The notes under the pieces are model-generated. The model saw nothing but the letters and a program-made list of their open reading frames with translations, made no database searches and was not told the DNA's origin. Below are positions 486 to 42,502 of a stretch of 64,000 bases of DNA, piece after piece. Each line of letters opens with the position of its first letter. Positions within the stretch are counted from its first letter, which is position 1. The stretch spans positions 1 through 64,000 of the IMG/VR virus record IMGVR_UViG_3300031884_000002; one strand, given 5' to 3'. A program made the position numbers and the translations under genes.

Positions 486-563
486 TGGGGTGTTTAGCCG
501 GAATTGAACCGTGCTCTTTTAATTTCACAAATTAAAGTGCAAAACCTTTACACTATAAACACC
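486..563 (-). tRNA. trnH: tRNA-His(GUG) with encoded G-1 and CCA
   Basis: Anticodon arm TTTAA-TT GTG AA-TTAAA region, T loop GGTTCAATTCC, G-1 opposite C73 (His identity), CCA end. Confidence 0.9.
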
Positions 564-2759: not shown

Positions 2760-4034
2760 TCAATTTAAACTTTGTTCTGGTTGTTTTTCAAATAATTCAG
2801 TTTTAATAACGTTTATACGCTTAATTATAAAGTCCGATGCCTTTTTAATTATATCAAGGTTACGTTTAATGGAGGTAGAATTACTCTTCCATAAACTTAA
2901 ATACACCGCATGATGTTCTACGGGAAGATTATAATATTTTAATACAACATAGGAAACTGATTCGGCTTGAAGTTCTCTTATTTCTCTGCTTAAATCATTA
3001 CTATCTTCATCATCTCCAATATAAGATTTGAATTGTCCTCGGGAATGTAATAATTCATGTGCTATTTCATGTATAAATGTAGAAGCTTTTGCCGCACCTG
3101 CAATATCACTGGATAGGTTAATATGACCTCCAGCACTAAATCCTTTTTCTCCTCTGGTTGCATCTACATTAGTTACTTTAATTCCCATTTCACTACATAT
3201 TTGTTCGGCACATAAACATATTTCATCGGCTAATTCGCTGGCATCATTTTTTCCATGCCATTGTAATTTATCTGGAATTGCTCCTTGTTCGTCAATTGGT
3301 TCCGTATCGGAAATATCAAATACACTAACTGCCATAAATCTAACAAATTGACGTTGTTTTGTGCCAGCATCAACATCGGCTTCATCTCCACCCGATGTAG
3401 CAGTTGCATTGGGAACTTCTTCTTTTCTTTTAATAGGTGCCAAGATAGTTATACTTTTTGCTCCTTTTTTAACACGTCTATGAAACTTTTCTTCCCATTG
3501 TTTAAATCCGGCAACGTGGGTAGCATCACGTCTTTGTAAATAAATTAACATGGTATTATAAAAACTATATCCATGAAATTTAGCATAAAACTCCAAGAAT
3601 TGTTTTACTTTTGCTGATTGAGTAGTAGCATCAACTGCCAAACTTAATTCATCAACATATTTTTCAATCTGCTGTCCCAATTCATCTTTACGGGATAAAT
3701 TATCGGTATTTTCTAAAAACTCAGGTATTTCCTCTATTTTATCGATAAACTTCTCGATTGGTTTTTTATTTATAATTCCTAATACTTCTTGGGCATGTTG
3801 CAATCTGTTAGCATCTATAGCCCATGAGTTTAATGTTGGATTCCATTTAAATCCTCTTGTTTTCAAGGCATCTTTATTACGAAAAGTTTCAGCACTTTGT
3901 CCTTTTCTATCGGGGGCATCGGATACGGCTACTAGTTTATCACCGGCACGTTTTAGAAGAAGTCCTTCAAATAAAATATAATCATTTAATTTGAATTGAT
4001 TGTTATTTTCGAGTATAAATAGTTTTGGAGTCAT
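2760..4034 (-). CDS. ArdC-like antirestriction/ssDNA-binding protein with zincin metallopeptidase domain
   Basis: FHGYSFYNTMLIYLQ...VAGFKQW...VKKGAKSITILAP (ArdC N-domain); HEIAH motif and ELQAESVSY. Confidence 0.8.
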   Translation of the reverse strand: MTPKLFILENNNQFKLNDYILFEGLLLKRAGDKLVAVSDAPDRKGQSAETFRNKDALKTRGFKWNPTLNSWAIDANRLQHAQEVLGIINKKPIEKFIDKIEEIPEFLENTDNLSRKDELGQQIEKYVDELSLAVDATTQSAKVKQFLEFYAKFHGYSFYNTMLIYLQRRDATHVAGFKQWEEKFHRRVKKGAKSITILAPIKRKEEVPNATATSGGDEADVDAGTKQRQFVRFMAVSVFDISDTEPIDEQGAIPDKLQWHGKNDASELADEICLCAEQICSEMGIKVTNVDATRGEKGFSAGGHINLSSDIAGAAKASTFIHEIAHELLHSRGQFKSYIGDDEDSNDLSREIRELQAESVSYVVLKYYNLPVEHHAVYLSLWKSNSTSIKRNLDIIKKASDFIIKRINVIKTELFEKQPEQSLN

Positions 4035-4081: not shown

Positions 4082-4158
4082 TGGAGCCATAATTCAGATT
4101 TGAACTGAAATATTTAGTTTACGAAACTAAAGTATTAACCAAATTATACGATTATGGC
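4082..4158 (-). tRNA. trnT: tRNA-Thr(CGU)
   Basis: GCCATAA/TTATGGC acceptor; TTAGT-TT CGT AA-ACTAA; T loop TTCAAAT; CCA. Confidence 0.9.
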
Positions 4159-4315: not shown

Positions 4316-5195
4316 TTAATACGACCACTGACTAGTAAAACTTATTCCAAATCCAAATAATTGAAATATTATTGATTCATATCCATATGCTCGTTGATAG
4401 GATATTCGGGTATTAAAATCTAATGTAGTTGTTGTATTTCCTTCACCATCTTCATATTTATATATAAATGTAGGAATCCAAATACCAACACAATAATAAT
4501 CAAAATCACTATTTTCCCATCCTATTGCAATATTATAAATAATCCATCTTAACCATTTATTTTTATAATAACTATTGGTATTTGTTTTTAATTTCTTACG
4601 AACCGACTCATAAATCGTCATAAATATTTTGTTTTTAATTGTTCCAATTTATCGGAAGCATCTTCAATAATTTCGGAAAATTTATCAGTTAATTCAAATG
4701 TAGTATCTTCTTTTGATTCTGCTCTTCCTATATCAAATGAAGTGTTACACATATCATCTATTTTCAAATTATTAACAAAATGATTAACTATTTTTTTGGT
4801 AAATAGTTTCCATTGTTCTCTTTCTGAGAATGATAGTGTATTTACATCTGGATAAAATTGATATAGTTCAGACCATAATGATTCAAATTGAGCCGGAACT
4901 TTATTTAAAATGTCGGCAATATCATCCATATATTTTATTTCATTTTTCATAATTACCCAGCATCATATAATCTATCACCATTATCATCGTGTTTAGGTTC
5001 TACCATATCATTCAATGAAATATCCCATTTGAACTTTGGTTTATAATCACCATCGCCATCACAATATAGAGATACGATACGAGAACCTCCCAATCCTCCT
5101 AATTGTTGCATATATTTTAACATAGCAAGAAAATGAGGTATCCATCTTTCGGACATTTCACATTCAATAGTAAACTTTTTATTTTGGTATTTCAT
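4316..5195 (-). CDS. Three small co-oriented hypothetical proteins (4316-4621, 4618-4950, 4953-5195)
   Basis: ORF track; abutting or overlapping start/stop codons. Confidence 0.7.
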
Positions 5196-6063
5196 TTGTA
5201 TCGGGATTATATTTTATTGCTTCATAAAATTTTTTAATTAAAACTATTATTTCTTCAGGTAAATACGAACATGCAGTTTCGACTAATTCTTTGGATATAG
5301 ATTCCGTTCCATAATATGCTTCGGCAATAGCTCCAGCAATTGCGGCATTAGTATCTGTATCACCTCCGATATATATAGCATTTCTAATTGCAGATTCGTA
5401 ATTATTAGATTCCATAAATGCAATTAATGCTTGTGGTGCAGTAACATTACATCGAATAGTTGTCTTTGGTTGTTTTCTGGCTTCGTCTAATGTAATATTG
5501 AGCATATGACCGTAATTCTCTTGAATATAATCTGCAATTTCCATTTTATCATATCCATTTTTTGCCATATGGATTGCAGTAACAATAGATTTTACCCCTC
5601 TGATAGATTCGGGAGAGTTATGCGTATATTTAATACTTTCTTCTGCATTTTCCAATGCAGTTTCTATATTAGAATCACTATAATACATTCCGATAGGACT
5701 ACACCGCATCATTGCTCCATTGGCATAACTATTATTAATTTGTAAAACTTTACTCGAATCTGCCAACCATTTTTTAAACCCGCTTCCATATCCTCTATCG
5801 GGATATTTAGTTCCCCATTTATAATAACTATCAGAATATTTGATTGGAGTAGGAACCCTAAATCCAAAAAAATGAACTGGATGATTTATTATTGCTTCTG
5901 CGGTGGCACAAGTCAATACTGTATCATCGGTAAATCTACATTGGGGAGTAAATAACCTAAAGTTTTTATTTTGAACTGGTCGTTTTGGATATTTGGGCGA
6001 CGATTCGTGCCTACTTCCTATTATGTCTCCGATTATTGCGCCGAGCATAGAACTCCTTCCCAC
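5179..6063 (-). CDS. ADP-ribosylglycohydrolase (DraG/ARH family)
   Basis: GAIIGDIIGS, TDDT, NGAMMR, GGDTDTNAAIAG motifs; true start probably at MLGAIIG. Confidence 0.92.
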   Translation of the reverse strand: MGRSSMLGAIIGDIIGSRHESSPKYPKRPVQNKNFRLFTPQCRFTDDTVLTCATAEAIINHPVHFFGFRVPTPIKYSDSYYKWGTKYPDRGYGSGFKKWLADSSKVLQINNSYANGAMMRCSPIGMYYSDSNIETALENAEESIKYTHNSPESIRGVKSIVTAIHMAKNGYDKMEIADYIQENYGHMLNITLDEARKQPKTTIRCNVTAPQALIAFMESNNYESAIRNAIYIGGDTDTNAAIAGAIAEAYYGTESISKELVETACSYLPEEIIVLIKKFYEAIKYNPDTNEIPK

Positions 6064-7200: not shown

Positions 7201-8525
7201 TGGAGGAAGGAAACCACGACGGCTTTAGCCTCGTGGAGGAATTCCGACCATTCTCAATATTAACACACCACCCATCAAATGTCAACCAAAAATATCTTCA
7301 CTGTATGAAAGATTTTTTGTGTTTTGGGATTCTCACGTGTATTTATATGTAGATGAGTAAATTAACATACAACACCAAGTTGATATTCACGGACGATAAT
7401 GATAAATCAAATATCATTAAAATGCTTGACTCCCAACTGTTTGTGTGGAATGAATGCTCAAAAATCCAATTTACTCTACCGAAAAACTCCATCATTGATT
7501 TACATTCTAAATTTTATAAGTCATTCCGAGAAAATAACCCAACCATTCCATCCCAAGTAGTAATTTCCGCAGAACAGTCCGTATTATCTACATTTAGGAC
7601 AATTAAATCAAATAAACAAAAAATAAAAAATCCACCAATTAAAAAGAATTTGTCAATTCGTCTTGATAAAAGAACATACTCCTATAAAAATGGAACATTT
7701 AGTTTGATTAGTTTGGGAAAACGAGTTAAATGTCAACCATACATATTCCCTAAATTACGAGAATTAATGTCTAAATATGCCTTTTGTGACCCATTGCTTT
7801 TTGTTCATAATAACGATATTTACATTGCTTTAACTTTTACCATTTCCGAAGTTAAATCTCAAAACAAATTAGCGATTGGAGTTGATTTGGGATGTGTGAA
7901 TTTAGCGGCAACAAGTGAAGGTAAATTGTATAAATGCGCATCATTTAATGCTAGAAAGAGACAATTACGACATCTCAAATCGGCATTAAAATCTAAAGGG
8001 ACGAAATCATCCCGAACCCATTTAAATAAATTACGACATAAAGAGCATAACGTAAACAAGAATATGTCTCATAATTTGGCAAATAGAATCATCCAAGACA
8101 CGACTGCCGATGTTATTGTCTTAGAGAATCTTAAATCATTAAAAGTTAAGAAGCATAAGTATCAGAATAAAAATAGAATTTCTCAAATTCCAATGTTTGA
8201 ATTGAGAAGAATAATTACCTATAAGGCACTCTTAAATGAGAAAACGGTTATCGTAGTAAATCCATCATACACAAGTCAAATTGACCATCGAACTGGAAAA
8301 CTCGACGGTCAAAGAATTGGTGGCAGGTATATCGGAAAAGATGGTCAAATATTACATGCGGATATTAATGCGGCTTGTAATATAGGACTTCGTTCCAAAC
8401 TCCCATGCTCAATAAATAATTATTATGCGTGGCAGGTGAAAGTCAACTCACCAATCGTATGTAAACCTTCTGCTAGTCGGGAAGTATTACAAGCACCTAT
8501 CCCTTTAGGGTAGGTGTTGTTTGAC
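7201..8525 (+). mobile_element. IS200/IS605-family tnpB-only element (IS1341-like); left boundary approximate (7200-7212)
   Basis: Left-end hairpin CCACGA-CGGCTTTAGCC-TCGTGG; right-end hairpin CACCTATCCC-TTTA-GGGTAGGTG followed by TTGTTTGAC; no tnpA. Confidence 0.8.
7353..8513 (+). CDS. tnpB: TnpB RNA-guided nuclease
   Basis: RuvC motifs GVDLG, VLENL, HADINAACNI; YTSQ motif without the usual CxxC zinc finger. Confidence 0.9.
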   Translation: MSKLTYNTKLIFTDDNDKSNIIKMLDSQLFVWNECSKIQFTLPKNSIIDLHSKFYKSFRENNPTIPSQVVISAEQSVLSTFRTIKSNKQKIKNPPIKKNLSIRLDKRTYSYKNGTFSLISLGKRVKCQPYIFPKLRELMSKYAFCDPLLFVHNNDIYIALTFTISEVKSQNKLAIGVDLGCVNLAATSEGKLYKCASFNARKRQLRHLKSALKSKGTKSSRTHLNKLRHKEHNVNKNMSHNLANRIIQDTTADVIVLENLKSLKVKKHKYQNKNRISQIPMFELRRIITYKALLNEKTVIVVNPSYTSQIDHRTGKLDGQRIGGRYIGKDGQILHADINAACNIGLRSKLPCSINNYYAWQVKVNSPIVCKPSASREVLQAPIPLG

Positions 8526-9689
8526 TGTAGTTAATACGTCTTTAACTACATCTTTATTATATGATGCTTCTTTTTTCTGTCTTGTTGGAATCTCTGGTAA
8601 TGGCTGGTCGAGCACTCCTTCCATTGGTTGACAATATTTAATCCATTTCGTAGGCACTGGACTAATAATGCCAATCATTCCACCAACAATAGCACAATTT
8701 GTATCAACATCACCAGAACATTGACAGACTTCAATGATTGCCTTTTCATACATTTCATCGATTGGATATTTTCTCAATGCTTTAATGGTTAAAAATACAC
8801 ATAGAGGAACGGTATCTTGGCAAGTAACATGAGTTCCATTTCCTAATACTTCAATTAGTTTTGCCAATGGAGTCCCAATGGATAATTTAGATGCTTTTTC
8901 AATTCCATTCCACACTTCTCCTTTGGGAACAAAGCTCAATAATGATTTATAATGGATTTCAGAATCTATTGTTAAATTTGGATTTACTTTCATCAGTTCA
9001 ACCATAGAAGCAATAAAGTTTGATAATAATGCTATTGCAATAGCCCCAGCAACTCCTTCAGGGTGACTGTGAGTTGGTTCGGCGGATAATGTGGCTTGTT
9101 TAATAACATCAGTTATTGGACTTCCATAGTAATAAGCACCCAATGGAGGAATACGCATAACCGAACCATTTCCACATGAACCTACTAATTGTTGGTCGAT
9201 TGGTTTATTACCCGATAAACTTTTCAAAGCCGCCAAACTTTCTTTTACTGATTTTCCAGCGGCAAGACCGGCAATAACATTATCGGTTGAAGACATTCCT
9301 TCACTTTTTTTAAATGTTAAATTGGCTTCTCTCCAAGGTTTTCCTTCATATATATCTTTTAATACCTTACGAGTCATCAACCCATATCCCATATATTCTC
9401 CCCCATCTTGATGATACATAAATCGTTTGGAGAACTCCATTGCCAAATCATCTTGTAATATTTCTTTATTTTTAAGAATATGATTAAATAATACAATTGC
9501 TTCATCCGTATCATCAGAATATTGAAAAGAGGCTCCTCGTGAATCGATATTATTTATTCCAAACTTAGATATTCCTTCATCGAATGCTTTTAGAATATCG
9601 GTTACATTATAAAGTTGCCCCATATTTCCAATACAGTCGCCAACCCATAATCCTATTAATGATTTTAATGCTAATTCTTCGTTATTCAT
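8505..9689 (-). CDS. ADP-ribosylglycohydrolase (second paralogue)
   Basis: GDCIG, YSDDT, GNGSVMR, HPEG, GDVDTNCAIVG; its last codons lie inside the IS right end. Confidence 0.9.
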   Translation of the reverse strand: MNNEELALKSLIGLWVGDCIGNMGQLYNVTDILKAFDEGISKFGINNIDSRGASFQYSDDTDEAIVLFNHILKNKEILQDDLAMEFSKRFMYHQDGGEYMGYGLMTRKVLKDIYEGKPWREANLTFKKSEGMSSTDNVIAGLAAGKSVKESLAALKSLSGNKPIDQQLVGSCGNGSVMRIPPLGAYYYGSPITDVIKQATLSAEPTHSHPEGVAGAIAIALLSNFIASMVELMKVNPNLTIDSEIHYKSLLSFVPKGEVWNGIEKASKLSIGTPLAKLIEVLGNGTHVTCQDTVPLCVFLTIKALRKYPIDEMYEKAIIEVCQCSGDVDTNCAIVGGMIGIISPVPTKWIKYCQPMEGVLDQPLPEIPTRQKKEASYNKDVVKDVLTTVKQHLP

Positions 9690-15247: not shown

Positions 15248-15637
15248 TGGTGGAGATGAAGGGAATTGAACCCTTGTGTTATGAACTAATCTTAAATAAT
15301 ACTATATGTTTAGTTTATTATGATTTTAACTGATATATCAACAAACAATTTACTTCAGTCGAGATGAATTAATTGATTCATCACCAAACAAATGATTGGA
15401 ACCATTTGCAGTTTTTTTCTGCTATTAGATGTAAGAGTTTTAGCAGAAATCCAACTCTTACATACTGTTCAGGCTATTGCTAACTCTTCACAGTCAACGG
15501 ACAAATCTACTTCATCCATTGCAGCCAATTGAGATAATCGATTAGCATTTAATTTTTGACTGATTTTTATCGTAGCCAACAATCATCTACGACATACATT
15601 ATTTAGTCAGAGAACATAGTCGATACCTGTCATCCCC
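15248..15637 (-). ncRNA. ssrA: tmRNA; tag ANRLSQLAAMDEVDLSVDCEELAIA*
   Basis: 5' GGGGATG / 3' CATCTCCACCA with G3-U70 wobble; T arm GGGTTCAATTCCC; resume context TTAAAT-GCT; upstream TTGACA-N17-TATATT. Confidence 0.93.
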
Positions 15638-16149: not shown

Positions 16150-17301
16150 TTGATGATAACTTATAATACACAAATTATACCAGAATGTAAAGAAGATTTT
16201 GATAACTTGAAATCTATACTTGAAATGGAACAATTGGTATTTAATTTTGCATCTAAACAACAATTTACAGAAAATAAAAAATCATTAGTAGTATTACATT
16301 CCAAAGTATATAGAAATATAAGAAAGAAGTATGCGAATATCCCATCCCAAGTGATTATCAAAGCCGAACAGGACTGTTTATCTAAATATAGAAGTATAAA
16401 ATCTAATCAACATAAAATAAAAAAACCAATAGAAAAAAGAAAATTATCACTTAGATTGGATAAACATTTATATTCTCATCCTTCAAAGGATGAAAAATAT
16501 TCAATCAGAATAACAACTATTAGTGGCAGAAAAATATTTAAGTTTATCATTTATCACAAACTGAAAGAATTACTCGATAAGTATAAATATCGTGATCCAT
16601 TAATTTATGAGAATAGCGGTAAATTATTCATATCATTCACATTTGAAAATAAACCGCAAGATAAATTAAAACAAAAATTAGCATTAGGAGTAGATTTAGG
16701 AATTAGACGTGCCGCTGGGACTTCGATTGGAAAACTTGTCATAGATAAAAAGTTTAATGGTGAAAAACGAAAACTTAGATTTAATAAACGAAAATTACAA
16801 TCGAAAGGAACTAAATCAGCAAGAAAACATTTATTTAAATTAAAACATAAAGAACATAATAAAAATAAAAATCAAACTCATTTAATAGCGAATGAGATAT
16901 TAAAAACAAATGCCGATACAATTGTATTGGAAAATCTAAAAGGAATAAAAAGAAAGAAAACAAAATATCAAAATAAGCGTTCAATCGGACAAGTTCCGAT
17001 ATATGAACTTCGTAGAATAATAACCTATAAGGCAGAGAACCAAGGTAAAACGGTTCTTTTAGTTTGCCCTTCTTATACTTCTCAACGAGACTCCGTAACG
17101 GGTAAAATTGAAGGTGAAAGAAGAGGTTGTAGATTTTATTCTAAGAATGGACTTATTTATGATGCAGATATAAATGCAGCAATAAACATTGCTAAATTAT
17201 CTAAACTTCCCATATCACAGACTAATAATTTGACTTATGGGCAGGCATCCATCAATGTGCCATATATATATAAATCTTCTACTAATGTAGAAGTAGTATA
17301 A
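16150..17301 (+). CDS. tnpB: Second TnpB nuclease, intact RuvC triad, no recognisable left end
   Basis: GVDLG, VLENL, YDADINAA; clear paralogue of 7353-8513; likely ATG at 16153. Confidence 0.9.
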   Translation: MMITYNTQIIPECKEDFDNLKSILEMEQLVFNFASKQQFTENKKSLVVLHSKVYRNIRKKYANIPSQVIIKAEQDCLSKYRSIKSNQHKIKKPIEKRKLSLRLDKHLYSHPSKDEKYSIRITTISGRKIFKFIIYHKLKELLDKYKYRDPLIYENSGKLFISFTFENKPQDKLKQKLALGVDLGIRRAAGTSIGKLVIDKKFNGEKRKLRFNKRKLQSKGTKSARKHLFKLKHKEHNKNKNQTHLIANEILKTNADTIVLENLKGIKRKKTKYQNKRSIGQVPIYELRRIITYKAENQGKTVLLVCPSYTSQRDSVTGKIEGERRGCRFYSKNGLIYDADINAAINIAKLSKLPISQTNNLTYGQASINVPYIYKSSTNVEVV

Positions 17302-17333
17302 ATATTTAAGATTAATTCTTAGGTATATTCGAT
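17239..17333 (+). ncRNA. Degenerate omegaRNA/right-end scaffold of the second tnpB
   Basis: Aligns with 8431-8525: GGCAGG..., CTTCT/AGAAG stem, then TATTTAAGA-TTAAT-TCTTAGGTA hairpin. Confidence 0.55.
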
Positions 17334-17497
17334 AATTCAGTACTCCATTTTTTAATAGCGGCAGTTATTTTCTTCAATTCTCTAAGTTCTCTATTAAAAG
17401 ATTGCGTTTCTTCTTCGGATACAGTATCATAATATTTATCAATGATATTTAATACCTTTTTCAATAGTTCCTTACGGTCTTTTTCAAATATTTTCAT
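17312..17497 (-). CDS. Hypothetical protein converging on tnpB2
   Basis: ORF track. Confidence 0.6.
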   Translation of the reverse strand: MKIFEKDRKELLKKVLNIIDKYYDTVSEEETQSFNRELRELKKITAAIKKWSTELSNIPKN

Positions 17498-17499
17498 TC

Positions 17500-17596
17500 A
17501 GATAATAAATATCAGATAGAATTATGAAAAATGAATGAAGATAATAAATATCAGATAGAATTATGAAAAATGAATGAAGATAAAAATATCAGATAA
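17500..17596. repeat. Tandem repeat, 39-bp unit, about 2.5 copies
   Basis: AGATAATAAATATCAGATAGAATTATGAAAAATGAATGA at 17500 and 17539, partial copy at 17578; no spacers. Confidence 0.9.
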
Positions 17597-17650
17597 TCGG
17601 CACAAAACAATGTATAAATATTAAAGGTTGACAATAATCTATTTTCTGAT

Positions 17651-17893
17651 ATGCTATGTCAAATTATGAATATCAATATTGACCCAATTAGAGAATCCAT
17701 TACTCCAAAAGAACCAATCAAATACATTAATGCGGCACAATGTAAAAAATTTGCCATAGAATATGCCAAACAAAATAAACCCAAGTTTACCAGAGTATCC
17801 AAGGAGTTCTTAAAATCATGTGAATATGTGGTAAGAAACCATATGGAATCAAGGATTAGAAACCACATTTCCAAAGGAAAGACTTTAATGTAA
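17651..17893 (+). CDS. Putative histone-fold protein (short, lacking helix 3); likely start 17666
   Basis: INAAQCKKFAIEYAK-loop-RVSKEF-long helix-SKGKTLM parallels the archaeal histone RVS and RKT loops. Confidence 0.55.
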   Translation: MLCQIMNINIDPIRESITPKEPIKYINAAQCKKFAIEYAKQNKPKFTRVSKEFLKSCEYVVRNHMESRIRNHISKGKTLM

Positions 17894-17894
17894 T

Positions 17895-18955
17895 ATGAAA
17901 AAATTAAAAATAATCAAAAAAGTTATAGGTTATATAGATACTAATGGATTTTATCTTGAATTAGAAGATAAATCTTTTATATCCTGTAATATGAAAATAT
18001 ATCATTCGGTAAATATAGGAGACGAAGTTGAAATAGAAGTAAACTTAGTTAGAACCATACGAGAAAGTATTATATGAATATTATTGATTATATCATGTTT
18101 TCATATTACATTAAAGTCACTATTTCTAATAATGTCATTGGTTTGTATTGCCTTGTTTAATATATGTGAAATAGTGTTATTTAATAAACTTAAAATTAAA
18201 TGGCACCACCGACAAATAAAAAATCATTATAAAAAATCCAAATTATATCCTATTGAAAAAGATGCCGACGATAGATTTAATGGAAATATAAATAAAGATT
18301 TTAGAATATATCATTTAAATCAGGCACAGCATCATAAAGATGAAGTTAGAAAAATAATAAACAATTCATAATGACATGGGAATGGATAATATTAGGGATG
18401 ATTTTTTTATTTTTATGTATAATTGAAAATAAAGAATAATATTTCTATATTTATAGAATATGATTATTATATCCATAATGTTGAATATTCTATTAGTTCT
18501 TACTATTCTGGGACTTATGAAATATTATAGAAATAAACCGCAATGTAATTTCAAAAACTCATGTACCAAGTTTAATTCACAAGATATTGTTTCTGCCGCC
18601 AAAAGAATAGTGGATTTAATTGTCGAAGAGCATCAGCATCAAAGCCTTATACGAAAAGAACTTATAAAATATATCAAATCTAAATAACAGAACCACTACA
18701 ATAATTAAAGTTACAATCTTCCAACATATTATTTAAATCAGACCCAGTAGCAGGTGTATTGTAAATGCTTTGTGAAATAGAAGAAGAATATAACTCTAAT
18801 TTAGCAGCCGCTTCTTTTTCCGCTTTCTTTTTATAATATCGAGCCAAATCTTTGGCATTCTTTTCTTCCTTGTTTCTCAAATAATAGCGATGGGAAGCTT
18901 CATTTAAAGCTCCTCTTTTTTCGTTATTGTTATAATATTTTTTTAGTCTTCCCAT
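17895..18955. CDS. Small hypothetical proteins: 17895-18077(+), 18084-18371(+), 18460-18687(+), 18680-18955(-)
   Basis: ORF track; two have N-terminal hydrophobic segments. Confidence 0.55.
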
Positions 18956-19944: not shown

Positions 19945-20343
19945 ATGAATACAAACACACGAGAAAAAGTTATTGACTTAAAATTAAAAGGATATAGCAA
20001 TCCCAAAATATCAAAATTATTAAATATTGGAATTTCTACTGTAAGATGGCATTATGATGAAAATTTTAGAAATACTAATCGTCAATGGAAAACAAAAAAA
20101 CGAAATGATATTTTGTATAAGTTAAAATCATTGAAAGGTAATAAATGTGAATTATGTGGTTATGATAAATGTCAATCTGCATTGCATTTTCATCATAAAA
20201 ATCCAGCCGAAAAATTATTTGAAATATCAGATAAACCACTACATAAATCACATCAAATTTTATTAGATGAAATTGATAAATGTCAATTGCTATGTGCGAA
20301 TTGTCACGCTGAAATAACATGGCCAGATTCGCACATAACATAA
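19945..20343 (+). CDS. HTH plus HNH endonuclease
   Basis: CELCGY...LHFHH...CQLLCANCHAE. Confidence 0.85.
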   Translation: MNTNTREKVIDLKLKGYSNPKISKLLNIGISTVRWHYDENFRNTNRQWKTKKRNDILYKLKSLKGNKCELCGYDKCQSALHFHHKNPAEKLFEISDKPLHKSHQILLDEIDKCQLLCANCHAEITWPDSHIT

Positions 20344-28080: not shown

Positions 28081-28827
28081 ATGGCAAGCAAAATAATGAC
28101 AATAGATAAAAATGAATTACAACTAATAATAGACAACAGTAAAACTTACGGTGACGTATTACGTCATTTTGGGTTGGAAAATAAAGGAGGAAATCACAAT
28201 ACTCTAAAACGAAGGATAAAAAATGATAATTTATCAACTGATAATATTATTAAATTTAAATCAGGAGGAGGATGGAATAAAGGATTACATGGATTTGATA
28301 TTAAAGCATTATCTAAAGAAGAAGTATTAAATATAGTGTTTATTAAAAATTATACTGGTGGAATACGACCAAGAACATATATTAGGAGATATAATCTAAT
28401 AGAAGAAAAATGTAATGAATGTGGATTAACTAATATCTGGAATAATAAACTAATTACATTAGAATTAGATCATATAGATGGCGACTCACATAATAATTTA
28501 TTAACTAATTTACGATGGGTATGTCCTAACTGCCATAGTCAAACTGATACATTCAGAGGTCGAAATAGAAAAATAGAACATTTTTGTGAATGTGGAAAAT
28601 TAAGATGTAAATCATCCAATAAATGTGTAGATTGTAATCATAAAGAACAATTAAATAAAAATCATAAAATTATTTGGCCAAGTGATACTGAACTTATGGA
28701 AATGATGAAGACTACTTCATTATATAAATTAAGTAAAACTCTTGGTGTTACTTCCAATTCTATTAGAAAACATTGTTATAAACGTAATATAAATTGGAGG
28801 AAAGATGGTGCAATGGGAGGGATTTGA
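28081..28827 (+). CDS. HNH homing endonuclease; 3' end overlaps tRNA-Lys antisense
   Basis: CNECG...LELDHIDGDSHNNLLTNLRWVCPNCHSQT. Confidence 0.9.
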   Translation: MASKIMTIDKNELQLIIDNSKTYGDVLRHFGLENKGGNHNTLKRRIKNDNLSTDNIIKFKSGGGWNKGLHGFDIKALSKEEVLNIVFIKNYTGGIRPRTYIRRYNLIEEKCNECGLTNIWNNKLITLELDHIDGDSHNNLLTNLRWVCPNCHSQTDTFRGRNRKIEHFCECGKLRCKSSNKCVDCNHKEQLNKNHKIIWPSDTELMEMMKTTSLYKLSKTLGVTSNSIRKHCYKRNINWRKDGAMGGI

Positions 28828-28885
28828 ACCCGTCTATCGTCCGATTAAAAGTCGGATGCTTATTCCAGATTTAAGCTTCCATTGC
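28806..28885 (-). tRNA. trnK: tRNA-Lys(UUU), canonical short variable loop
   Basis: TCCGA-CT TTT AA-TCGGA; GCAATGG/CCATTGC acceptor; ACCA. Confidence 0.9.
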
Positions 28886-36365: not shown

Positions 36366-36442
36366 GGCTCGATGGTGAAAATGGATTATCATAAGGCACT
36401 TCTAATGCTAAGTTCTGGGTTCAACTCCCAGTCGAGCCACCA
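36366..36442 (+). tRNA. trnR: tRNA-Arg(UCU)
   Basis: GGCTCGA/TCGAGCC acceptor; loop CT TCT AA; CTGGG-TTCAACT-CCCAG; ACCA. Confidence 0.9.
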
Positions 36443-40233: not shown

Positions 40234-41136
40234 CTAATTAAACAATATCCAATTATGTGTCATTATGCGTTCGCCTCTGGTTATGCGGCGGACCATATTG
40301 GCATTTAATTTGTATTTATTTATAAAATCAAATTGTATTCCTTCATATATTTCATTCGTAATAATATTTTTAAACTTAAATATTGTTTTTAACTTCAATG
40401 AATTAGATATTTGTGATTTTTTAATAAAATTAATATTTCGACGAGTTTCTCCTTTATATTTCCATTCTTTAACTAATGATTTAAACTTATTTACGTTTAT
40501 ATTATATGATATGGCTAATTGTAAAGCAGATGAATATCCAAGTTTCTCATATAAACTTTGTAATTCTCTTTGTTTATAATTTTCTATGTGAATATAACAT
40601 GGATTAGATTTTCCTCTTACTCTATTCGTATGATTTAATCTAAATTGTTTATCATTCCATAATAATTTCATATTATCTCTACACAATAGTCTCATATTTT
40701 CAGTGTTATACCCACCCGTAACATCAAACTTTAAATTATACACTTTATATTTATTTAATTTAGCAATATCTAAATAATATTGTTCTATTTTATTAAGCGT
40801 CTTTCTGTTCGATTTGGCATATTCCAGTTCTACAAATATAAATGCTTCTTTTCCATATTTATTCCATGCACTCTGTAAATATTTATTTGTGTGTTTATTA
40901 GTTATTAAATGTCGTTTGTGATTATTTCTAATTCTATGCCAAAAGTTTTTAGTACTTCCAACATACCATTTTCCATTGATTTTATTTACTATTAGGTAAA
41001 TCCCGCTTTTCTTTGACATCGTAGTATCTGTCAAGTTTCCGTTTACGTTCGGTAATTTTGTGCCGGTCATAATAGCGTTTATAACGTTCTCTATTTTTTG
41101 CTCTCGTTCGCTCAAGACGTTGTTTAAGTTCTTCAT
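40234..41136 (-). CDS. GIY-YIG homing endonuclease; true start probably at MSKKSGIY
   Basis: SGIYLIVNKINGKWYVGS...HTNKYLQSAWNKYG...LNKIEQYYLD. Confidence 0.9.
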   Translation of the reverse strand: MKNLNNVLSEREQKIENVINAIMTGTKLPNVNGNLTDTTMSKKSGIYLIVNKINGKWYVGSTKNFWHRIRNNHKRHLITNKHTNKYLQSAWNKYGKEAFIFVELEYAKSNRKTLNKIEQYYLDIAKLNKYKVYNLKFDVTGGYNTENMRLLCRDNMKLLWNDKQFRLNHTNRVRGKSNPCYIHIENYKQRELQSLYEKLGYSSALQLAISYNINVNKFKSLVKEWKYKGETRRNINFIKKSQISNSLKLKTIFKFKNIITNEIYEGIQFDFINKYKLNANMVRRITRGERIMTHNWILFN

Positions 41137-41516
41137 AGGTATATTCTTTCTTTTTCATACATATAAATATCATCAATTTTTCCAAACGCATAGAAAATAT
41201 CACTTGACTATTTTCTAAAAATCTGTAATATGTATTCAGTTGTAAGCGAAAAGTTAAGAAATCAATAAATTAGTCCAAAAAATATTTCTTGACTTTTTTC
41301 TAAAGTCTGATAATATTTATGTCTTGTTAAGATTTGAGACAAAAGTGGGGTGACTCCCATAGACAAAACTCAAAAAGTATATCTAGTCCATATACTTTAC
41401 TTCGGGTCTGATATGATAGACTCGACAGAGATTAATAAGGAACGATTAAGCTCTGAATTATAAAAGATAGGTTTTTTGGGCAAGTTTCCTTATATAAAAA
41501 ACTGCCAGTTTAATTT

Positions 41517-41590
41517 TGCAGATTAGTGTAATCCGGCAACACATTTGGCTCATAACCAAAAGTTTCAGTTCAAATCTGAGTCTGCTACCA
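41517..41590 (+). tRNA. tRNA-Met(CAU) with 1:72 mismatch (initiator-like; Ile2 not excluded)
   Basis: TTTGG-CT CAT AA-CCAAA; T1:T72 mismatch; ACCA. Confidence 0.85.
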
Positions 41591-42428: not shown

Positions 42429-42502
42429 TGGTCCCCCATGAAGGAATCGAACCTTCATCAAAGCCTTATAAAGACTCCGCTAGACCTTCCAGCTAATGGG
42501 GG
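42429..42502 (-). tRNA. trnI: tRNA-Ile(UAU)
   Basis: GAGTC-TT TAT AA-GGCTT; CCCCCAT/ATGGGGG acceptor; A73; CCA. Confidence 0.85.

What the first reader, a model, noticed from the sequence alone, without database searches (positions are those of the whole stretch)
17651..17893. Probable phage-encoded histone-fold protein
Seen: helix(INAAQCKKFAIEYAK)-loop-RVS-long helix-SKGKTLM, ending where helix 3 would begin, with its own TTGACA-N16-TATGCT promoter. Known: archaeal histones (HMf) have RVS in loop 1 and RKT in loop 2 as paired DNA-binding loops, and short prokaryotic histones lacking helix 3 exist. Inference: it may coat or compact phage DNA, or shield it from host nucleases.
Basis: partly seen in the sequence, partly recalled or inferred. 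Interest (0 to 1): 0.7.

Follow-up and report, generated by a model that had tools for sequence, protein, structure and literature searches.

The report
Phage histone-fold protein lacking helix 3
A 354-kb lake-water phage encodes a small, very basic protein that is predicted to pair up like a histone but lacks the third helix, and it belongs to a large, unnamed, phage-only family probably made early in infection to bind DNA.

Summary
One correction: the -10 hexamer contains ATG 17651, so the likely start is ATG 17666 (75 aa).

The gene is real. It has hundreds of homologues, and the core dN/dS is about 0.02.

A family profile hits only one solved protein significantly: HTkC, an archaeal alpha3-truncated histone (E 3e-5). 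All six structural matches with Z of 5 or more are histone folds (TAF4, HTkC, HBb, HLp). A homodimer model passes its controls (0.65 against 0.09), and its contacts are those of the histone handshake.

The most conserved residues lie in loops L1 (F-T-R-V-S) and L2 (P-S-K-G-K-T), which form the DNA-binding site in known histones. The core is basic (pI 10). In 82% of members the protein stops 1-2 residues after the L2 threonine, so helix 3 is absent.

The promoter belongs to a stereotyped class that is 13-fold enriched in the window and mostly drives leaderless mRNAs. Relatives sit in phage replication and early regions.

Pfam, PHROGs and NCBIfam do not model the family. DNA binding and biological role are inferred, not shown. 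Phage alpha3 histones have been catalogued before, so this is a new variant of a known kind.

The parts
17628..17633 (+). -35 hexamer TTGACA of the gene's promoter
   Evidence: Read directly. It belongs to the pattern TTGACA-N15-18-TAnnnT, found 82 times in the window against 6.25 expected. It is conserved in relatives L009 and L011 while the flanks diverge.
17647..17655 (+). Extended -10 element TGATATGCT; it contains ATG 17651
   Evidence: TG before the second hexamer. The same ...CTGATAT(A/G)(C/A)T form recurs at about ten other promoters in the window.
17666..17893 (+). Most likely coding sequence (75 aa plus stop) of the alpha3-less histone-fold protein.
   Evidence: M6 is the shared start in 90% or more of close homologues. 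The ATG lies 10 nt after the -10, consistent with the genome-wide leaderless arrangement. Core dN/dS is 0.02-0.03.
17666..17722 (+). Variable N-terminal tail (residues 6-24 of the 80-aa numbering), modelled with low confidence
   Evidence: pLDDT is about 60. Tail length ranges from 2 to 56 residues across the family. The tail is not basic.
17732..17776 (+). Helix alpha1 (residues 28-42), carrying the conserved K32/K33, A35, L/I36 and A39
   Evidence: DSSP assignment on the AlphaFold2 model; column conservation; it contacts alpha2 of the partner chain.
17777..17800 (+). Loop L1 (residues 43-50, KPKFTRVS): F46, R48 and V49 are 98-99% conserved, S50 92%
   Evidence: The RVS aligns with the RVS of HTkC. 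The loop pairs with L2 of the partner chain in the dimer model.
17801..17863 (+). Helix alpha2 (residues 51-71), the dimerisation helix
   Evidence: The two alpha2 helices cross antiparallel at residues 60/61. The spacing from S50 to G76 is 25 residues in all 122 members.
17864..17890 (+). Loop L2 and the C-terminus (residues 72-80, HISKGKTLM): G76 and T78 are invariant; family positions 73 (consensus P, here I) and 74 (S) are 93% conserved. No alpha3 follows.
   Evidence: 100 of 122 members end 1-2 residues after T78. It aligns with GRKTL of HTkC.
17895..18077 (+). 60-aa ORF starting 2 nt after the stop codon, probably co-transcribed; function unknown
   Evidence: A homologue was found only in L011 among the loci held. 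It has no significant family hit.
18460..18687 (+). 75-aa ORF with a hydrophobic N-terminus, a syntenic neighbour of the histone-fold gene
   Evidence: Homologues sit in the same position in L009, L010, L011 and L015. A TTGAAA-N17-TATATT site ends 8 nt before its ATG.
17312..17497 (-). Divergently oriented 61-aa ORF, a syntenic neighbour
   Evidence: Homologues lie next to the histone-fold gene in L009, L011 and L015.

Best explanation
The gene encodes a roughly 8.9-kDa, strongly basic protein made of a variable N-terminal tail and a minimal histone fold: alpha1, L1, alpha2 and L2, with no alpha3.

Two chains are predicted to form the classical histone handshake dimer. The alpha2 helices cross antiparallel at their midpoints, and L1 of one chain pairs with L2 of the other.

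By analogy with HMfB, HBb and HLp, I infer that the dimer binds DNA without sequence specificity. The contacts would be the two paired-loop sites (R48, S50, K75, K77, T78) and the lysines of alpha1 (K32/K33), and binding would bend or coat the DNA.

The family lacks alpha3 and the RD clamp. These carry the tetramer or polymer contacts in face-to-face and nucleosomal histones. I therefore expect a dimer that bends or coats DNA rather than a wrapping tetramer.

The gene has its own copy of the phage's stereotyped sigma-70-like promoter and is probably translated from a leaderless mRNA early in infection. Relatives lie in replication, recombination and early regions of many unrelated phages. The most likely role is therefore an architectural DNA-binding protein acting inside the infected cell, either on replicating or incoming phage DNA or on the host nucleoid.

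Shown by computation: the gene is real, the fold and its homology, a plausible dimer, the promoter class and the genomic context. Inferred only: DNA binding, oligomeric state, timing of expression and biological role.
For: Real gene: 33 homologues, 48 representatives at the 50% identity level, 669 at E<=10 with a profile, of which the listed best 120 are all below 1e-21. In the core, 17 synonymous against 3 non-synonymous differences give dN/dS 0.02-0.03.

Homology to histones: profiles against the PDB hit HTkC (9F2C), and the E-value improves as the profile broadens: 0.022, then 2.4e-4, then 3e-5. The match covers residues 3-54 of 59, and the next hit is at E=0.4.

Fold: the AlphaFold2 model has pLDDT 85. 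All six VIA-align matches with Z>=5 are histone folds, including HTkC at Z 5.5 with 26% identity over 53 of 58 residues, HBb at 5.3 and HLp at 5.2. The named AlphaFold DB matches are Histone, POLE4, CENP-X, CHRAC1 and CBF/NF-Y. The only Pfam-bearing neighbours in the Atlas are PF00808 and PF09123.

Dimer: ipSAE is 0.65 against a best control of 0.09. That mark was reached by 20 of 30 solved homodimers and 1 of 23 monomers. The runs agree at 96% or more, and partner pLDDT is 70 or more. Contacts include 60-60, 61-61, 65-34/35/38, 78-48 and 50-78.

Likely binding site: L1 and L2 are the most conserved columns. Core pI is 10.0 with net charge +9, and across the family pI runs from 9.5 to 11.9.

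Alpha3 absent: 100 of 122 members end 1-2 residues after T78.

Promoter: 82 sites against 6.25 expected. Genome-wide there are 88 strict sites, and in 51 of 75 the ATG lies 6-9 nt after the -10. The genome has no Shine-Dalgarno signal. Relatives in seven other low-GC loci carry TTGAC[AT]-N15-19-TAnnnT upstream.

Context: DUF2800 nuclease, DNA polymerase A, helicase and primase in L006 and L013. Across 16 viral loci the neighbours are dominated by clamp loader, exonucleases, DNA polymerases, methyltransferases, integrases and RIIA/B.
Against: - No Pfam, PHROG or NCBIfam model matches the protein or its relatives.
- The Pfam histone models PF09123 and PF00808 find nothing in the phage genome even at E<=10.
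- Foldseek E-values against the PDB are not significant (4-10), although the top hits are histones.
- VIA-align Z-scores of 5-6 lie in a range that small helical proteins can reach by chance (note).
- The RxTxxxxD motif of face-to-face and nucleosomal histones is reduced to the threonine alone.
- The dimer score may partly reflect the model's memory of solved histone dimers (caveat).
- No RNA data exist for this phage, so expression and its timing are unverified.
- DNA binding was not modelled or measured.
Confidence: 0.6

Rival explanations
1. The protein has a true histone fold, but it serves as a specific regulator or a protein-protein module, like NF-Y, NC2 or the TAFs. It would work as a transcription or replication factor at particular sites or partners, for example with the adjacent DUF2800 nuclease or the replisome, rather than as a general DNA-coating protein.
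For: The best structural match is the TAF4 histone fold at Z 5.7, and several TFIID, SAGA and NC2 chains follow. The gene sits immediately upstream of DUF2800 inside replication modules in two lineages. There is only one copy in a 354-kb genome. Nothing is known about its abundance.
Against: The conserved residues are those that contact the DNA backbone in histones (the L1 arginine, the L2 threonine, the alpha1 lysines), not an extra surface. The closest full-length sequence and structure matches are bulk DNA binders: HTkC, HBb and HLp. The neighbours differ between lineages, so there is no fixed partner gene.
Confidence: 0.2
2. The protein is a helix-loop-helix dimer that only resembles a histone. 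The RVS and GKT motifs and the fold match would be convergent, and the protein would do something unrelated to DNA, for example act as an anti-defence or host-takeover factor that binds a host protein.
For: The Pfam histone HMMs do not detect it. Structural scores are modest. Two-helix hairpins are common arrangements. Many small early phage proteins inhibit host proteins.
Against: The profile match to HTkC at E=3e-5 covers the whole domain, has both loops in register, and improves as the profile broadens. Histone folds dominate the top structural matches in three independent libraries. The predicted contacts reproduce the L1-L2 pairing. The charge is uniformly basic across the family.
Confidence: 0.12
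3. The protein is a packaged, virion-internal DNA-condensing protein that neutralises charge inside the capsid of a jumbo phage and is injected with the DNA.
For: It is small and very basic. Jumbo phages must pack very long genomes. A protein injected with the DNA could shield the DNA at once.
Against: The gene carries the early-type sigma-70-like promoter shared with the dense small-gene region at 20-45 kb. In other phages it lies in replication or early modules, and among the 25 commonest neighbour families listed none is a capsid or tail family; the only packaging gene there is one terminase. It also occurs in phages of 40-70 kb.
Confidence: 0.05

Closest known systems
HTkC of Thermococcus kodakarensis (PDB 9F2C), a face-to-face alpha3-truncated histone (Schwab et al. 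2024, PMC11390915)
   Same: It is the only significant sequence match in the PDB (E=3e-5), with RVS in L1 and G(R)KTL in L2 in register and an ungapped alpha2 of the same length. The structural match is Z 5.5 with 26% identity over 53 of 58 residues. Both are small (59 aa against a 56-aa core).
   Different: HTkC keeps a short alpha3, the RxTxxxxD motif and the RD clamp, and it forms a torus-shaped tetramer through alpha2, L2 and alpha3 (PMC11390915, PMC12701072). The phage protein stops two residues after the L2 threonine and has G in place of the clamp arginine. It has six extra residues between alpha1 and RVS and an N-terminal tail. Its tetramer state was not tested.
HBb (Bd0055) of Bdellovibrio bacteriovorus (PDB 8CMP, 8FVX, 9EZZ), a bacterial dimer alpha3 histone
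   Same: The fold matches at Z 5.3 and TM 0.66 with rmsd 2.1 A. It is a dimer-only, non-specific DNA binder that bends DNA (PMC12701072). This is the behaviour I predict for the phage protein.
   Different: HBb is cellular and essential and retains the RD clamp and a C-terminal turn. Sequence identity is only about 16%. No HMM-level match was seen.
Phage histones of Schwab et al. (A0A2E7QIQ9) and the Caudoviricetes histone-fold clusters of Liu et al. (VTTH, VFFH, VHHH, BBVH, VKH; bioRxiv 10.1101/2024.12.06.627149, also PMC13681535)
   Same: They are alpha3-type histone folds encoded by tailed phages, found by metagenome mining, and the phage histones lack the RxTxxxD motif. VFFH members carry N-terminal tails of 5-40 aa, and VHHH members lack the long C-terminal helix.
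   Different: Phage histones and VTTH have the fold at the N-terminus followed by a long C-terminal tetramerisation helix. Here the fold is C-terminal and nothing follows L2. The VFFH tails are lysine-rich, whereas this tail is not. I could not check whether this family is in their lists. No supplementary text is held for Liu et al., and the motifs FTRVS and SKGKTL do not occur in the Schwab supplements.
Archaeal nucleosomal histones HMfA/HMfB (Pfam PF00808)
   Same: They share RVS in L1 and (R)KT in L2, the arginine-threonine pairing across the dimer, and the handshake dimer. The HMfB motifs are from my own knowledge. HPhA is a structural match at Z 4.0.
   Different: HMf has a 10-residue alpha3 and an alpha2 about one turn longer, and it polymerises into hypernucleosomes through alpha3 and alpha2 contacts (PMC11390915). 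PF00808 finds nothing in this genome.
TAF4 histone-fold domain in the TAF4-TAF12 crystal (PDB 1H3O)
   Same: It is the top structural match (Z 5.7, 49 of 49 residues aligned), and it too appears in the crystal as a two-helix alpha1-L1-alpha2 unit (the missing alpha3 is from my own knowledge).
   Different: It is a eukaryotic heterodimer partner in TFIID with 10% identity and no evidence of common descent beyond the fold. It is a protein-protein module, not a basic DNA binder.

Membership tests
Histone fold (structural superfamily) | alpha1-L1-long alpha2-L2-alpha3 helix-strand-helix layout | tested here: inconclusive
   alpha1 (28-42), L1, alpha2 (51-71) and L2 are present at pLDDT 90-97. alpha3 is absent, since the protein ends two residues after the L2 threonine. 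Four of the five elements are therefore met.
Histone fold (structural superfamily) | Antiparallel handshake dimer with L1 of one chain paired to L2 of the other | tested here: met
   Prediction only. ipSAE is 0.65 against a best control of 0.09. Contacts are 60-60, 61-61, alpha1 to the partner's alpha2, and 48/50 with 77/78/80.
Histone fold (structural superfamily) | Closest structures are histone-fold proteins | tested here: met
   All six chains with Z>=5 among 48,161, and most of the top 30, are histone folds. The same holds for the Foldseek PDB top hits and the named AlphaFold DB hits, though with weak E-values.
alpha3-truncated histones (Schwab et al. 2024) | alpha3 reduced to 3-4 residues or fewer | tested here: met
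   100 of 122 family members have only 1-2 residues after the invariant L2 threonine. This is more extreme than the definition quoted.
alpha3-truncated histones (Schwab et al. 2024) | alpha2 is 4-5 residues shorter than in nucleosomal histones | tested here: met
   alpha2 aligns without a gap to that of HTkC. The S50-to-G76 spacing is 25 residues in all 122 members. HMfB has about four residues more between RVS and RKT (own knowledge).
alpha3-truncated histones (Schwab et al. 2024) | Detectable sequence relationship to family members | tested here: met
   The profile matches HTkC at E=3e-5 against 177,635 PDB sequences, and it is the only hit below 0.4.
Pfam DUF1931 (PF09123) and CBFD_NFYB_HMF (PF00808) | Score above the curated cut-off of the Pfam model | tested here: not met
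   None of 74 members hits either model at E<=1. Neither model finds anything in the 354-kb genome at E<=10.
Face-to-face (FtF) histones | RxTxxxxD motif (the RD clamp plus the L2 threonine) | tested here: not met
   Only the threonine (T78) is present. The arginine position is G76, or a one-residue gap in the alignment. No residue exists at the aspartate position because the protein ends.
Face-to-face (FtF) histones | Tetramer through alpha2 C-terminus, L2 and alpha3 (HLp residues R49, S52, N53, R55, T61, F63) | not tested
   The alpha3 half of that interface cannot exist here.
Phage histones (Schwab) and VTTH (Liu) | N-terminal alpha3 fold followed by a long C-terminal tetramerisation helix | tested here: not met
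   The fold is C-terminal and nothing follows it. Only the N-terminus is extended, and it is modelled as disordered (definitions).
Functional histone or nucleoid-associated protein | Binds DNA and is abundant on DNA in the cell | not testable with these tools
   There are only indirect signs: core pI 10 and charge +9, and conserved L1, L2 and alpha1 lysine positions. No RNA runs hold this phage.

The most novel reading that the evidence does not exclude
This family may be the smallest natural histone fold: a two-helix unit of about 56 residues with no alpha3 at all. It appears confined to tailed phages. It would be expressed within the first minutes from a leaderless early transcript and build a phage-made chromatin. 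That chromatin would either coat incoming and replicating phage DNA to shield it from restriction or CRISPR nucleases, or remodel and silence the host nucleoid. Either way it would be a mode of phage-host conflict not yet demonstrated for any phage histone.
Probability: 0.3. Interest if true: 0.8.

Novelty: new variant of a known kind. Interest (0 to 1): 0.55.

Why it matters
[quoted passage not shown] The few studied so far (HBb, HLp, HTkC) each bind DNA in a different way, and I found no experimental study of a small alpha3-type histone-fold protein of a tailed phage in infection.

This family is large, with hundreds of sequences, and I found it in no prokaryote reference genome. Pfam, PHROGs and NCBIfam have no model for it. 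It shows how far the histone fold can be cut down while keeping its dimer interface and its loop residues.

Its early-promoter context and its place in replication modules point to a testable idea: that phages use their own minimal chromatin protein during infection. The protein is only about 75 residues long, so it is easy to synthesise, purify, crystallise and test for DNA binding, bending and nuclease protection.

The surrounding promoter analysis also shows a jumbo phage that appears to run dozens of early genes as leaderless mRNAs.

Tried and rejected
Family libraries:
- Pfam, PHROGs and NCBIfam scans of the protein and of 74 relatives gave no family. The few hits belong to a fused RlpA-like domain in P0062.
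- PF09123 and PF00808 searched against the phage's own genome found nothing.

Searches in other collections:
- Megablast of 6 kb, and tblastn of two family members, against 50,697 GenBank phage records gave no match. No cultured phage with a close homologue is known from that set.
- A scan of 185,579 prokaryote species genomes with two strict family motifs gave no confirmed relative. The patterns were narrow, so distant prophage copies could have been missed.
- The search for related loci with the wide alignment A2 failed for lack of a conserved block. A1 was used instead.

Structure and promoter scans:
- Foldseek against the PDB and BFVD gave no significant E-values apart from two uncharacterised family members.
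- The relaxed sigma-70 scan of 15-20 kb showed no enrichment (31 sites against 35.4 in shuffles). That result misled at first, because the strict pattern is 13-fold enriched.

Context and data:
- The neighbours of the gene in L002 and L004 have no Pfam or PHROG match.
- No RNA sequencing run holds the phage.
- The supplements of the two survey papers could not show whether this family was already listed.

Ideas rejected:
- A spurious ORF, given dN/dS of 0.02.
- A second paralogue for heterodimers, since there is one copy only.
- The downstream 60-aa ORF as a fixed partner, since it is present only in L011.
Full report
**Where the window comes from.** The window is the first 64 kb of a 353,772-bp IMG/VR virus record that CheckV rates as complete. 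It is a jumbo tailed phage with about 30% G+C. It carries eight tRNAs and a tmRNA, TnpB-type transposases, homing endonucleases and ADP-ribosylglycohydrolases. Near-identical DNA occurs in at least 17 lake-water and freshwater metagenome samples. No RNA run holds it.

**Checking the observation.** AlphaFold2, given a 74-sequence alignment, places helices at residues 28-42 and 51-71. pLDDT is 90-97 in the core and about 60 in the first 24 residues.

TTGACA (17628-17633), a 16-nt spacer and TATGCT (17650-17655) are present, with a TG that makes an extended -10. The -10 hexamer contains ATG 17651, so the promoter and that start codon exclude each other. The in-frame ATG 17666 (M6) is the start shared by 90% or more of close homologues. 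It is the more likely start, giving 75 aa.

**Is the gene real?** It is clearly a gene.
- The first search found 33 homologues.
- The exhaustive search of 50%-identity representatives found 48, two of which are low-complexity artefacts.
- A profile of 122 members found 669 proteins at E<=10, and the 120 listed are all below 1e-21.
- Against two orthologues, the 56-codon core has 16-17 synonymous and 3 non-synonymous differences, so dN/dS is about 0.02-0.03.

None of these proteins has a Pfam domain or any name other than "hypothetical". Pfam, PHROGs and NCBIfam do not model the family.

**Anatomy of the family.** The core is about 56 residues. Its consensus is LIN....KKFALE.A...R..KFTRVS..FL...E......I...V..HPSKGKTL(M/K).
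- The N-terminal extension varies from 2 to 56 residues.
- The distance from the L1 serine to the L2 glycine is 25 residues in all 122 aligned members.
- 100 of 122 members end one or two residues after the invariant threonine.
- The most conserved columns are not in the helices but in the two loops. They are F46, R48, V49 and S50, then the proline position (I73 in this protein), S74, G76, K77 and T78.
- The core has pI 10.0 and net charge +9. Every family member has a basic core, with pI 9.5-11.9.

**Is it a histone fold?** Three independent lines agree.

Sequence. A family profile searched against all PDB sequences hits one protein significantly: HTkC of Thermococcus kodakarensis (9F2C). The E-value improves as the profile broadens, from 0.022 with 32 sequences to 2.4e-4 with 74 and 3e-5 with 122. 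The match covers residues 3-54 of 59. RVS and G(R)KTL are in register and alpha2 is ungapped. The next hit is at E=0.4. HTkC is the crystallised face-to-face member of the alpha3-truncated histones (PMC11390915).

Structure. An all-against-all alignment of the model to 48,161 PDB chains gave six matches with Z>=5, and all six are histone folds. They are TAF4 at 5.7, HTkC at 5.5 (26% identity, 53 of 58 residues), TFIID chains, HBb at 5.3 and HLp at 5.2. Histones, TAFs, NC2 and CENP proteins fill most of the top 30. Foldseek E-values are not significant for so small a protein. Even so, its top PDB hits are H2B, HBb and a Marseillevirus histone. In the AlphaFold DB clusters, three family members are followed by entries named Histone, POLE4, CBF/NF-Y, CENP-X and CHRAC1. 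In the ESM Atlas the only neighbours with a Pfam family carry PF00808 or PF09123, at lead-level scores of 0.79-0.85.

Dimer. A two-copy prediction scored ipSAE 0.65 against a best control of 0.09. That mark was reached by 20 of 30 solved homodimers and 1 of 23 monomers. The runs agree at 96% or more, and partner pLDDT is 70 or more. The contact list is the histone handshake:
- the alpha2 helices cross at residues 60/61;
- alpha1 packs on the partner's alpha2 (65 with 34/35/38, 69 with 35/38/39);
- L1 residues 48-50 touch L2 residues 77-80 of the other chain.

The score may partly reflect the model's memory of solved histone dimers. It shows likeness, not binding.

**What is not met.** The Pfam histone models do not detect any of 74 members at E<=1. 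They find nothing in the phage genome at E<=10. The RxTxxxxD motif of face-to-face and nucleosomal histones survives only as the threonine, and the protein ends before the aspartate of the RD clamp could occur. The family is therefore a divergent, more radically truncated relative of the alpha3 histones. [quoted passage not shown] It is also not one of the "phage histones" of Schwab et al. or the VTTH of Liu et al., which carry a long C-terminal tetramerisation helix.

**The promoter.** A relaxed sigma-70 scan of 15-20 kb showed no enrichment. The strict pattern TTGACA-N15-18-TAnnnT tells a different story. It occurs 82 times in the window against 6.25 +/- 2.58 in shuffles, and none of 100 shuffles reached 82.

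Genome-wide there are 88 sites of the N16 form, 36 of them between 20 and 40 kb. Their consensus is stereotyped, ending ...(T/C)(C/T)(T/G)ATATA(C)T. In 51 of the 75 sites followed by an ORF, the ATG lies 6-9 nt after the -10 hexamer. That is about where transcription normally starts, so these would be leaderless mRNAs. This agrees with the complete lack of Shine-Dalgarno signal in the genome.

The target's promoter belongs to the ...CTGATAT(G/A)CT subclass, and its ATG 17666 lies 10 nt after the -10. The block from TTGACA to ATG 17666 is nearly identical in the related contigs L009 and L011, while the flanking intergenic DNA and the first codons diverge. Relatives in seven further low-GC phage loci also carry TTGAC[AT]-N15-19-TAnnnT just upstream. 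It suggests early transcription by a sigma-70-type host polymerase. Timing itself is an inference.

**Genomic context.** In the window the gene heads a short rightward unit inside a leftward-transcribed region. A 60-aa ORF starts 2 nt after its stop codon, and a 95-aa ORF follows. Three neighbours are syntenic in L009, L011 and L015: the divergent 61-aa ORF, the 75-aa hydrophobic ORF and the convergent 91-aa ORF.

The TnpB gene at 16150-17301 and the 39-bp x 2.5 tandem repeat at 17500-17595 are absent from L009 and L011.

In more distant phages the context is as follows.
- In L002 (a 312-kb contig) and L004, the gene is the first of a rightward operon at a divergent junction.
- In L006, L007 and L013 it lies inside replication modules, directly before a DUF2800 nuclease and near a helicase, DNA polymerase A and a primase-helicase.
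- In L012 and L014 it lies in runs of small early genes with Mu Gam, DnaJ or HTH proteins.
- In L005 it lies near an integrase.

A tally of ORFs of 140 aa or more within 4.5 kb in 16 non-redundant IMG/VR loci is dominated by DNA-metabolism genes: clamp loaders, PD-(D/E)XK exonucleases, DNA polymerases, DNA methyltransferases, integrases, endonuclease VII, HNH and RIIA/RIIB. Among the 25 commonest families listed there is one terminase and no capsid or tail family.

The family occurs on 29 IMG/VR contigs of 5.5-139 kb found with strict motifs. The loci that carry it span 31-64% G+C. It was not found in 185,579 prokaryote species genomes with those motifs, nor in 50,697 GenBank phage records.

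**Mechanism proposed.** The likely product is a homodimer of about 18 kDa with a two-fold symmetric basic face. Each end carries a paired L1-L2 site (R48, S50, K75, K77, T78). The centre carries the alpha1 N-termini with K32/K33.

In HLp-DNA crystals, the L1 and L2 loops and the alpha1 lysines are what contact the phosphate backbone (PMC12701072). In HMfB the L1 arginine and the L2 threonine form the classical pair (own knowledge). I therefore infer sequence-independent DNA binding.

The alpha3 helix and the RD clamp supply the dimer-dimer contacts in FtF tetramers and nucleosomal polymers. They are missing here. The protein is thus more likely to act as a dimer that bends or coats DNA, as HBb does, than to wrap it. 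This is untested.

Early promoter type and replication-module context point to action in the infected cell, on phage DNA (replication, recombination or protection) or on the host nucleoid. HLp and HMfB reorganise the E. coli nucleoid when expressed there, so a host-takeover role is plausible. I cannot choose between these roles.

**Rivals.**
- A specific regulator or protein-interaction histone fold, like the TAFs or NF-Y, is the main alternative (0.2).
- Convergent resemblance without homology is less likely, given the register-perfect profile match (0.12).
- A virion-internal condensing protein fits the charge but not the context (0.05).

**Novelty.** Phage-encoded alpha3-type histone folds have been catalogued from metagenomes (PMC11390915; bioRxiv 10.1101/2024.12.06.627149), so the kind is known. 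This family differs in architecture: the fold sits at the C-terminus, alpha3 is wholly absent, the alpha1-L1 segment is longer and the N-tail varies. Pfam's histone models do not detect it and it has no annotation anywhere. I could not establish whether it is included in the published lists. I rate it a new variant of a known kind, with moderate to good interest. The protein is an easy experimental target, and no phage histone-fold protein of this small type has been characterised in infection.

Noticed in passing
window 1-64000 (densest at 21000-45500); whole genome G000: A stereotyped sigma-70-like promoter, TTGACA-N16-TATA(C)T, occurs 82 times in the window against about 6 expected, and 88 times genome-wide in its strict form. 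In 51 of 75 cases the ATG of an ORF of 40 aa or more lies 6-9 nt after the -10. The genome has no Shine-Dalgarno signal. This jumbo phage therefore seems to express dozens of small early genes as leaderless mRNAs.
   Followed up: partly
window 15248-15637 (-): A full-length tmRNA gene is encoded by the phage (ARAGORN, and Rfam RF00023 at 82.9 bits, E 1e-31). It lies 2 kb from the finding. ARAGORN's tag peptide looks atypical and was not checked further.
   Followed up: partly
window 16150-17301 (+) and 7353-8513 (+): Two TnpB / IS605 OrfB-like genes (Cas12f1-like TNB domain, phrog_506). The copy at 16150-17301 sits between the tmRNA region and the histone-fold gene and is absent from the related contigs L009 and L011, so it is a recent insertion. 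Another family locus (L015) also has a TnpB nearby.
   Followed up: partly
window 17500-17595: A 39-bp unit is repeated 2.5 times at 98% identity in the divergent intergenic region just upstream of the promoter. It is absent from L009 and L011. Its function is unknown; it could be a regulatory repeat or a by-product of the TnpB insertion.
   Followed up: partly
window 17628-17662: TTGACA (17628-17633) and its inverted copy TGTCAA (17657-17662) bracket the promoter, which creates a promoter-like site on the minus strand as well (TTGACA-N15-TAGATT). The right arm reads TGGCAA in L009 and L011, so this is probably chance.
   Followed up: partly
window 5179-6063 (-), 8505-9689 (-), 2760-4034 (-): Two ADP-ribosylglycohydrolase-like ORFs (phrog_6572) and an ORF matching an anti-restriction protein family (phrog_7245) lie in the leftward block. 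The related contig L009 also carries an ADP_ribosyl_GH gene in the same relative place.
   Followed up: no
window 486-562, 1121-1208, 4082-4158, 28806-28885, 36366-36442, 41516-41589, 42429-42502: Seven tRNA genes (His, Lys x2, Thr, Arg, Met, Ile), including two tRNA-Lys(UUU) of unusual length (88 and 80 nt). These might contain introns or be mispredictions.
   Followed up: no
L006 8001-9550; L007 3809-5358; L013 8001-9366: In two separate phage lineages the histone-fold gene lies immediately upstream of a DUF2800 (PD-(D/E)XK-like) nuclease gene inside a helicase - DNA polymerase A - primase module. In L006 and L007 the two genes overlap; in L013 a gap of about 90 nt separates them. This hints at a functional link with recombination or replication.
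   Followed up: partly
protein P0062 (178 aa): One family member continues after GKTLM into a signal-peptide-like stretch and an RlpA/DPBB lytic transglycosylase domain. This is most likely two adjacent genes merged by a gene call rather than a true fusion.
   Followed up: no
window 19945-20343 (+), 40234-41136 (-): An HNH-motif ORF and a homing endonuclease of the GIY-YIG / phrog_314 type show that the region is rich in selfish elements.
   Followed up: no
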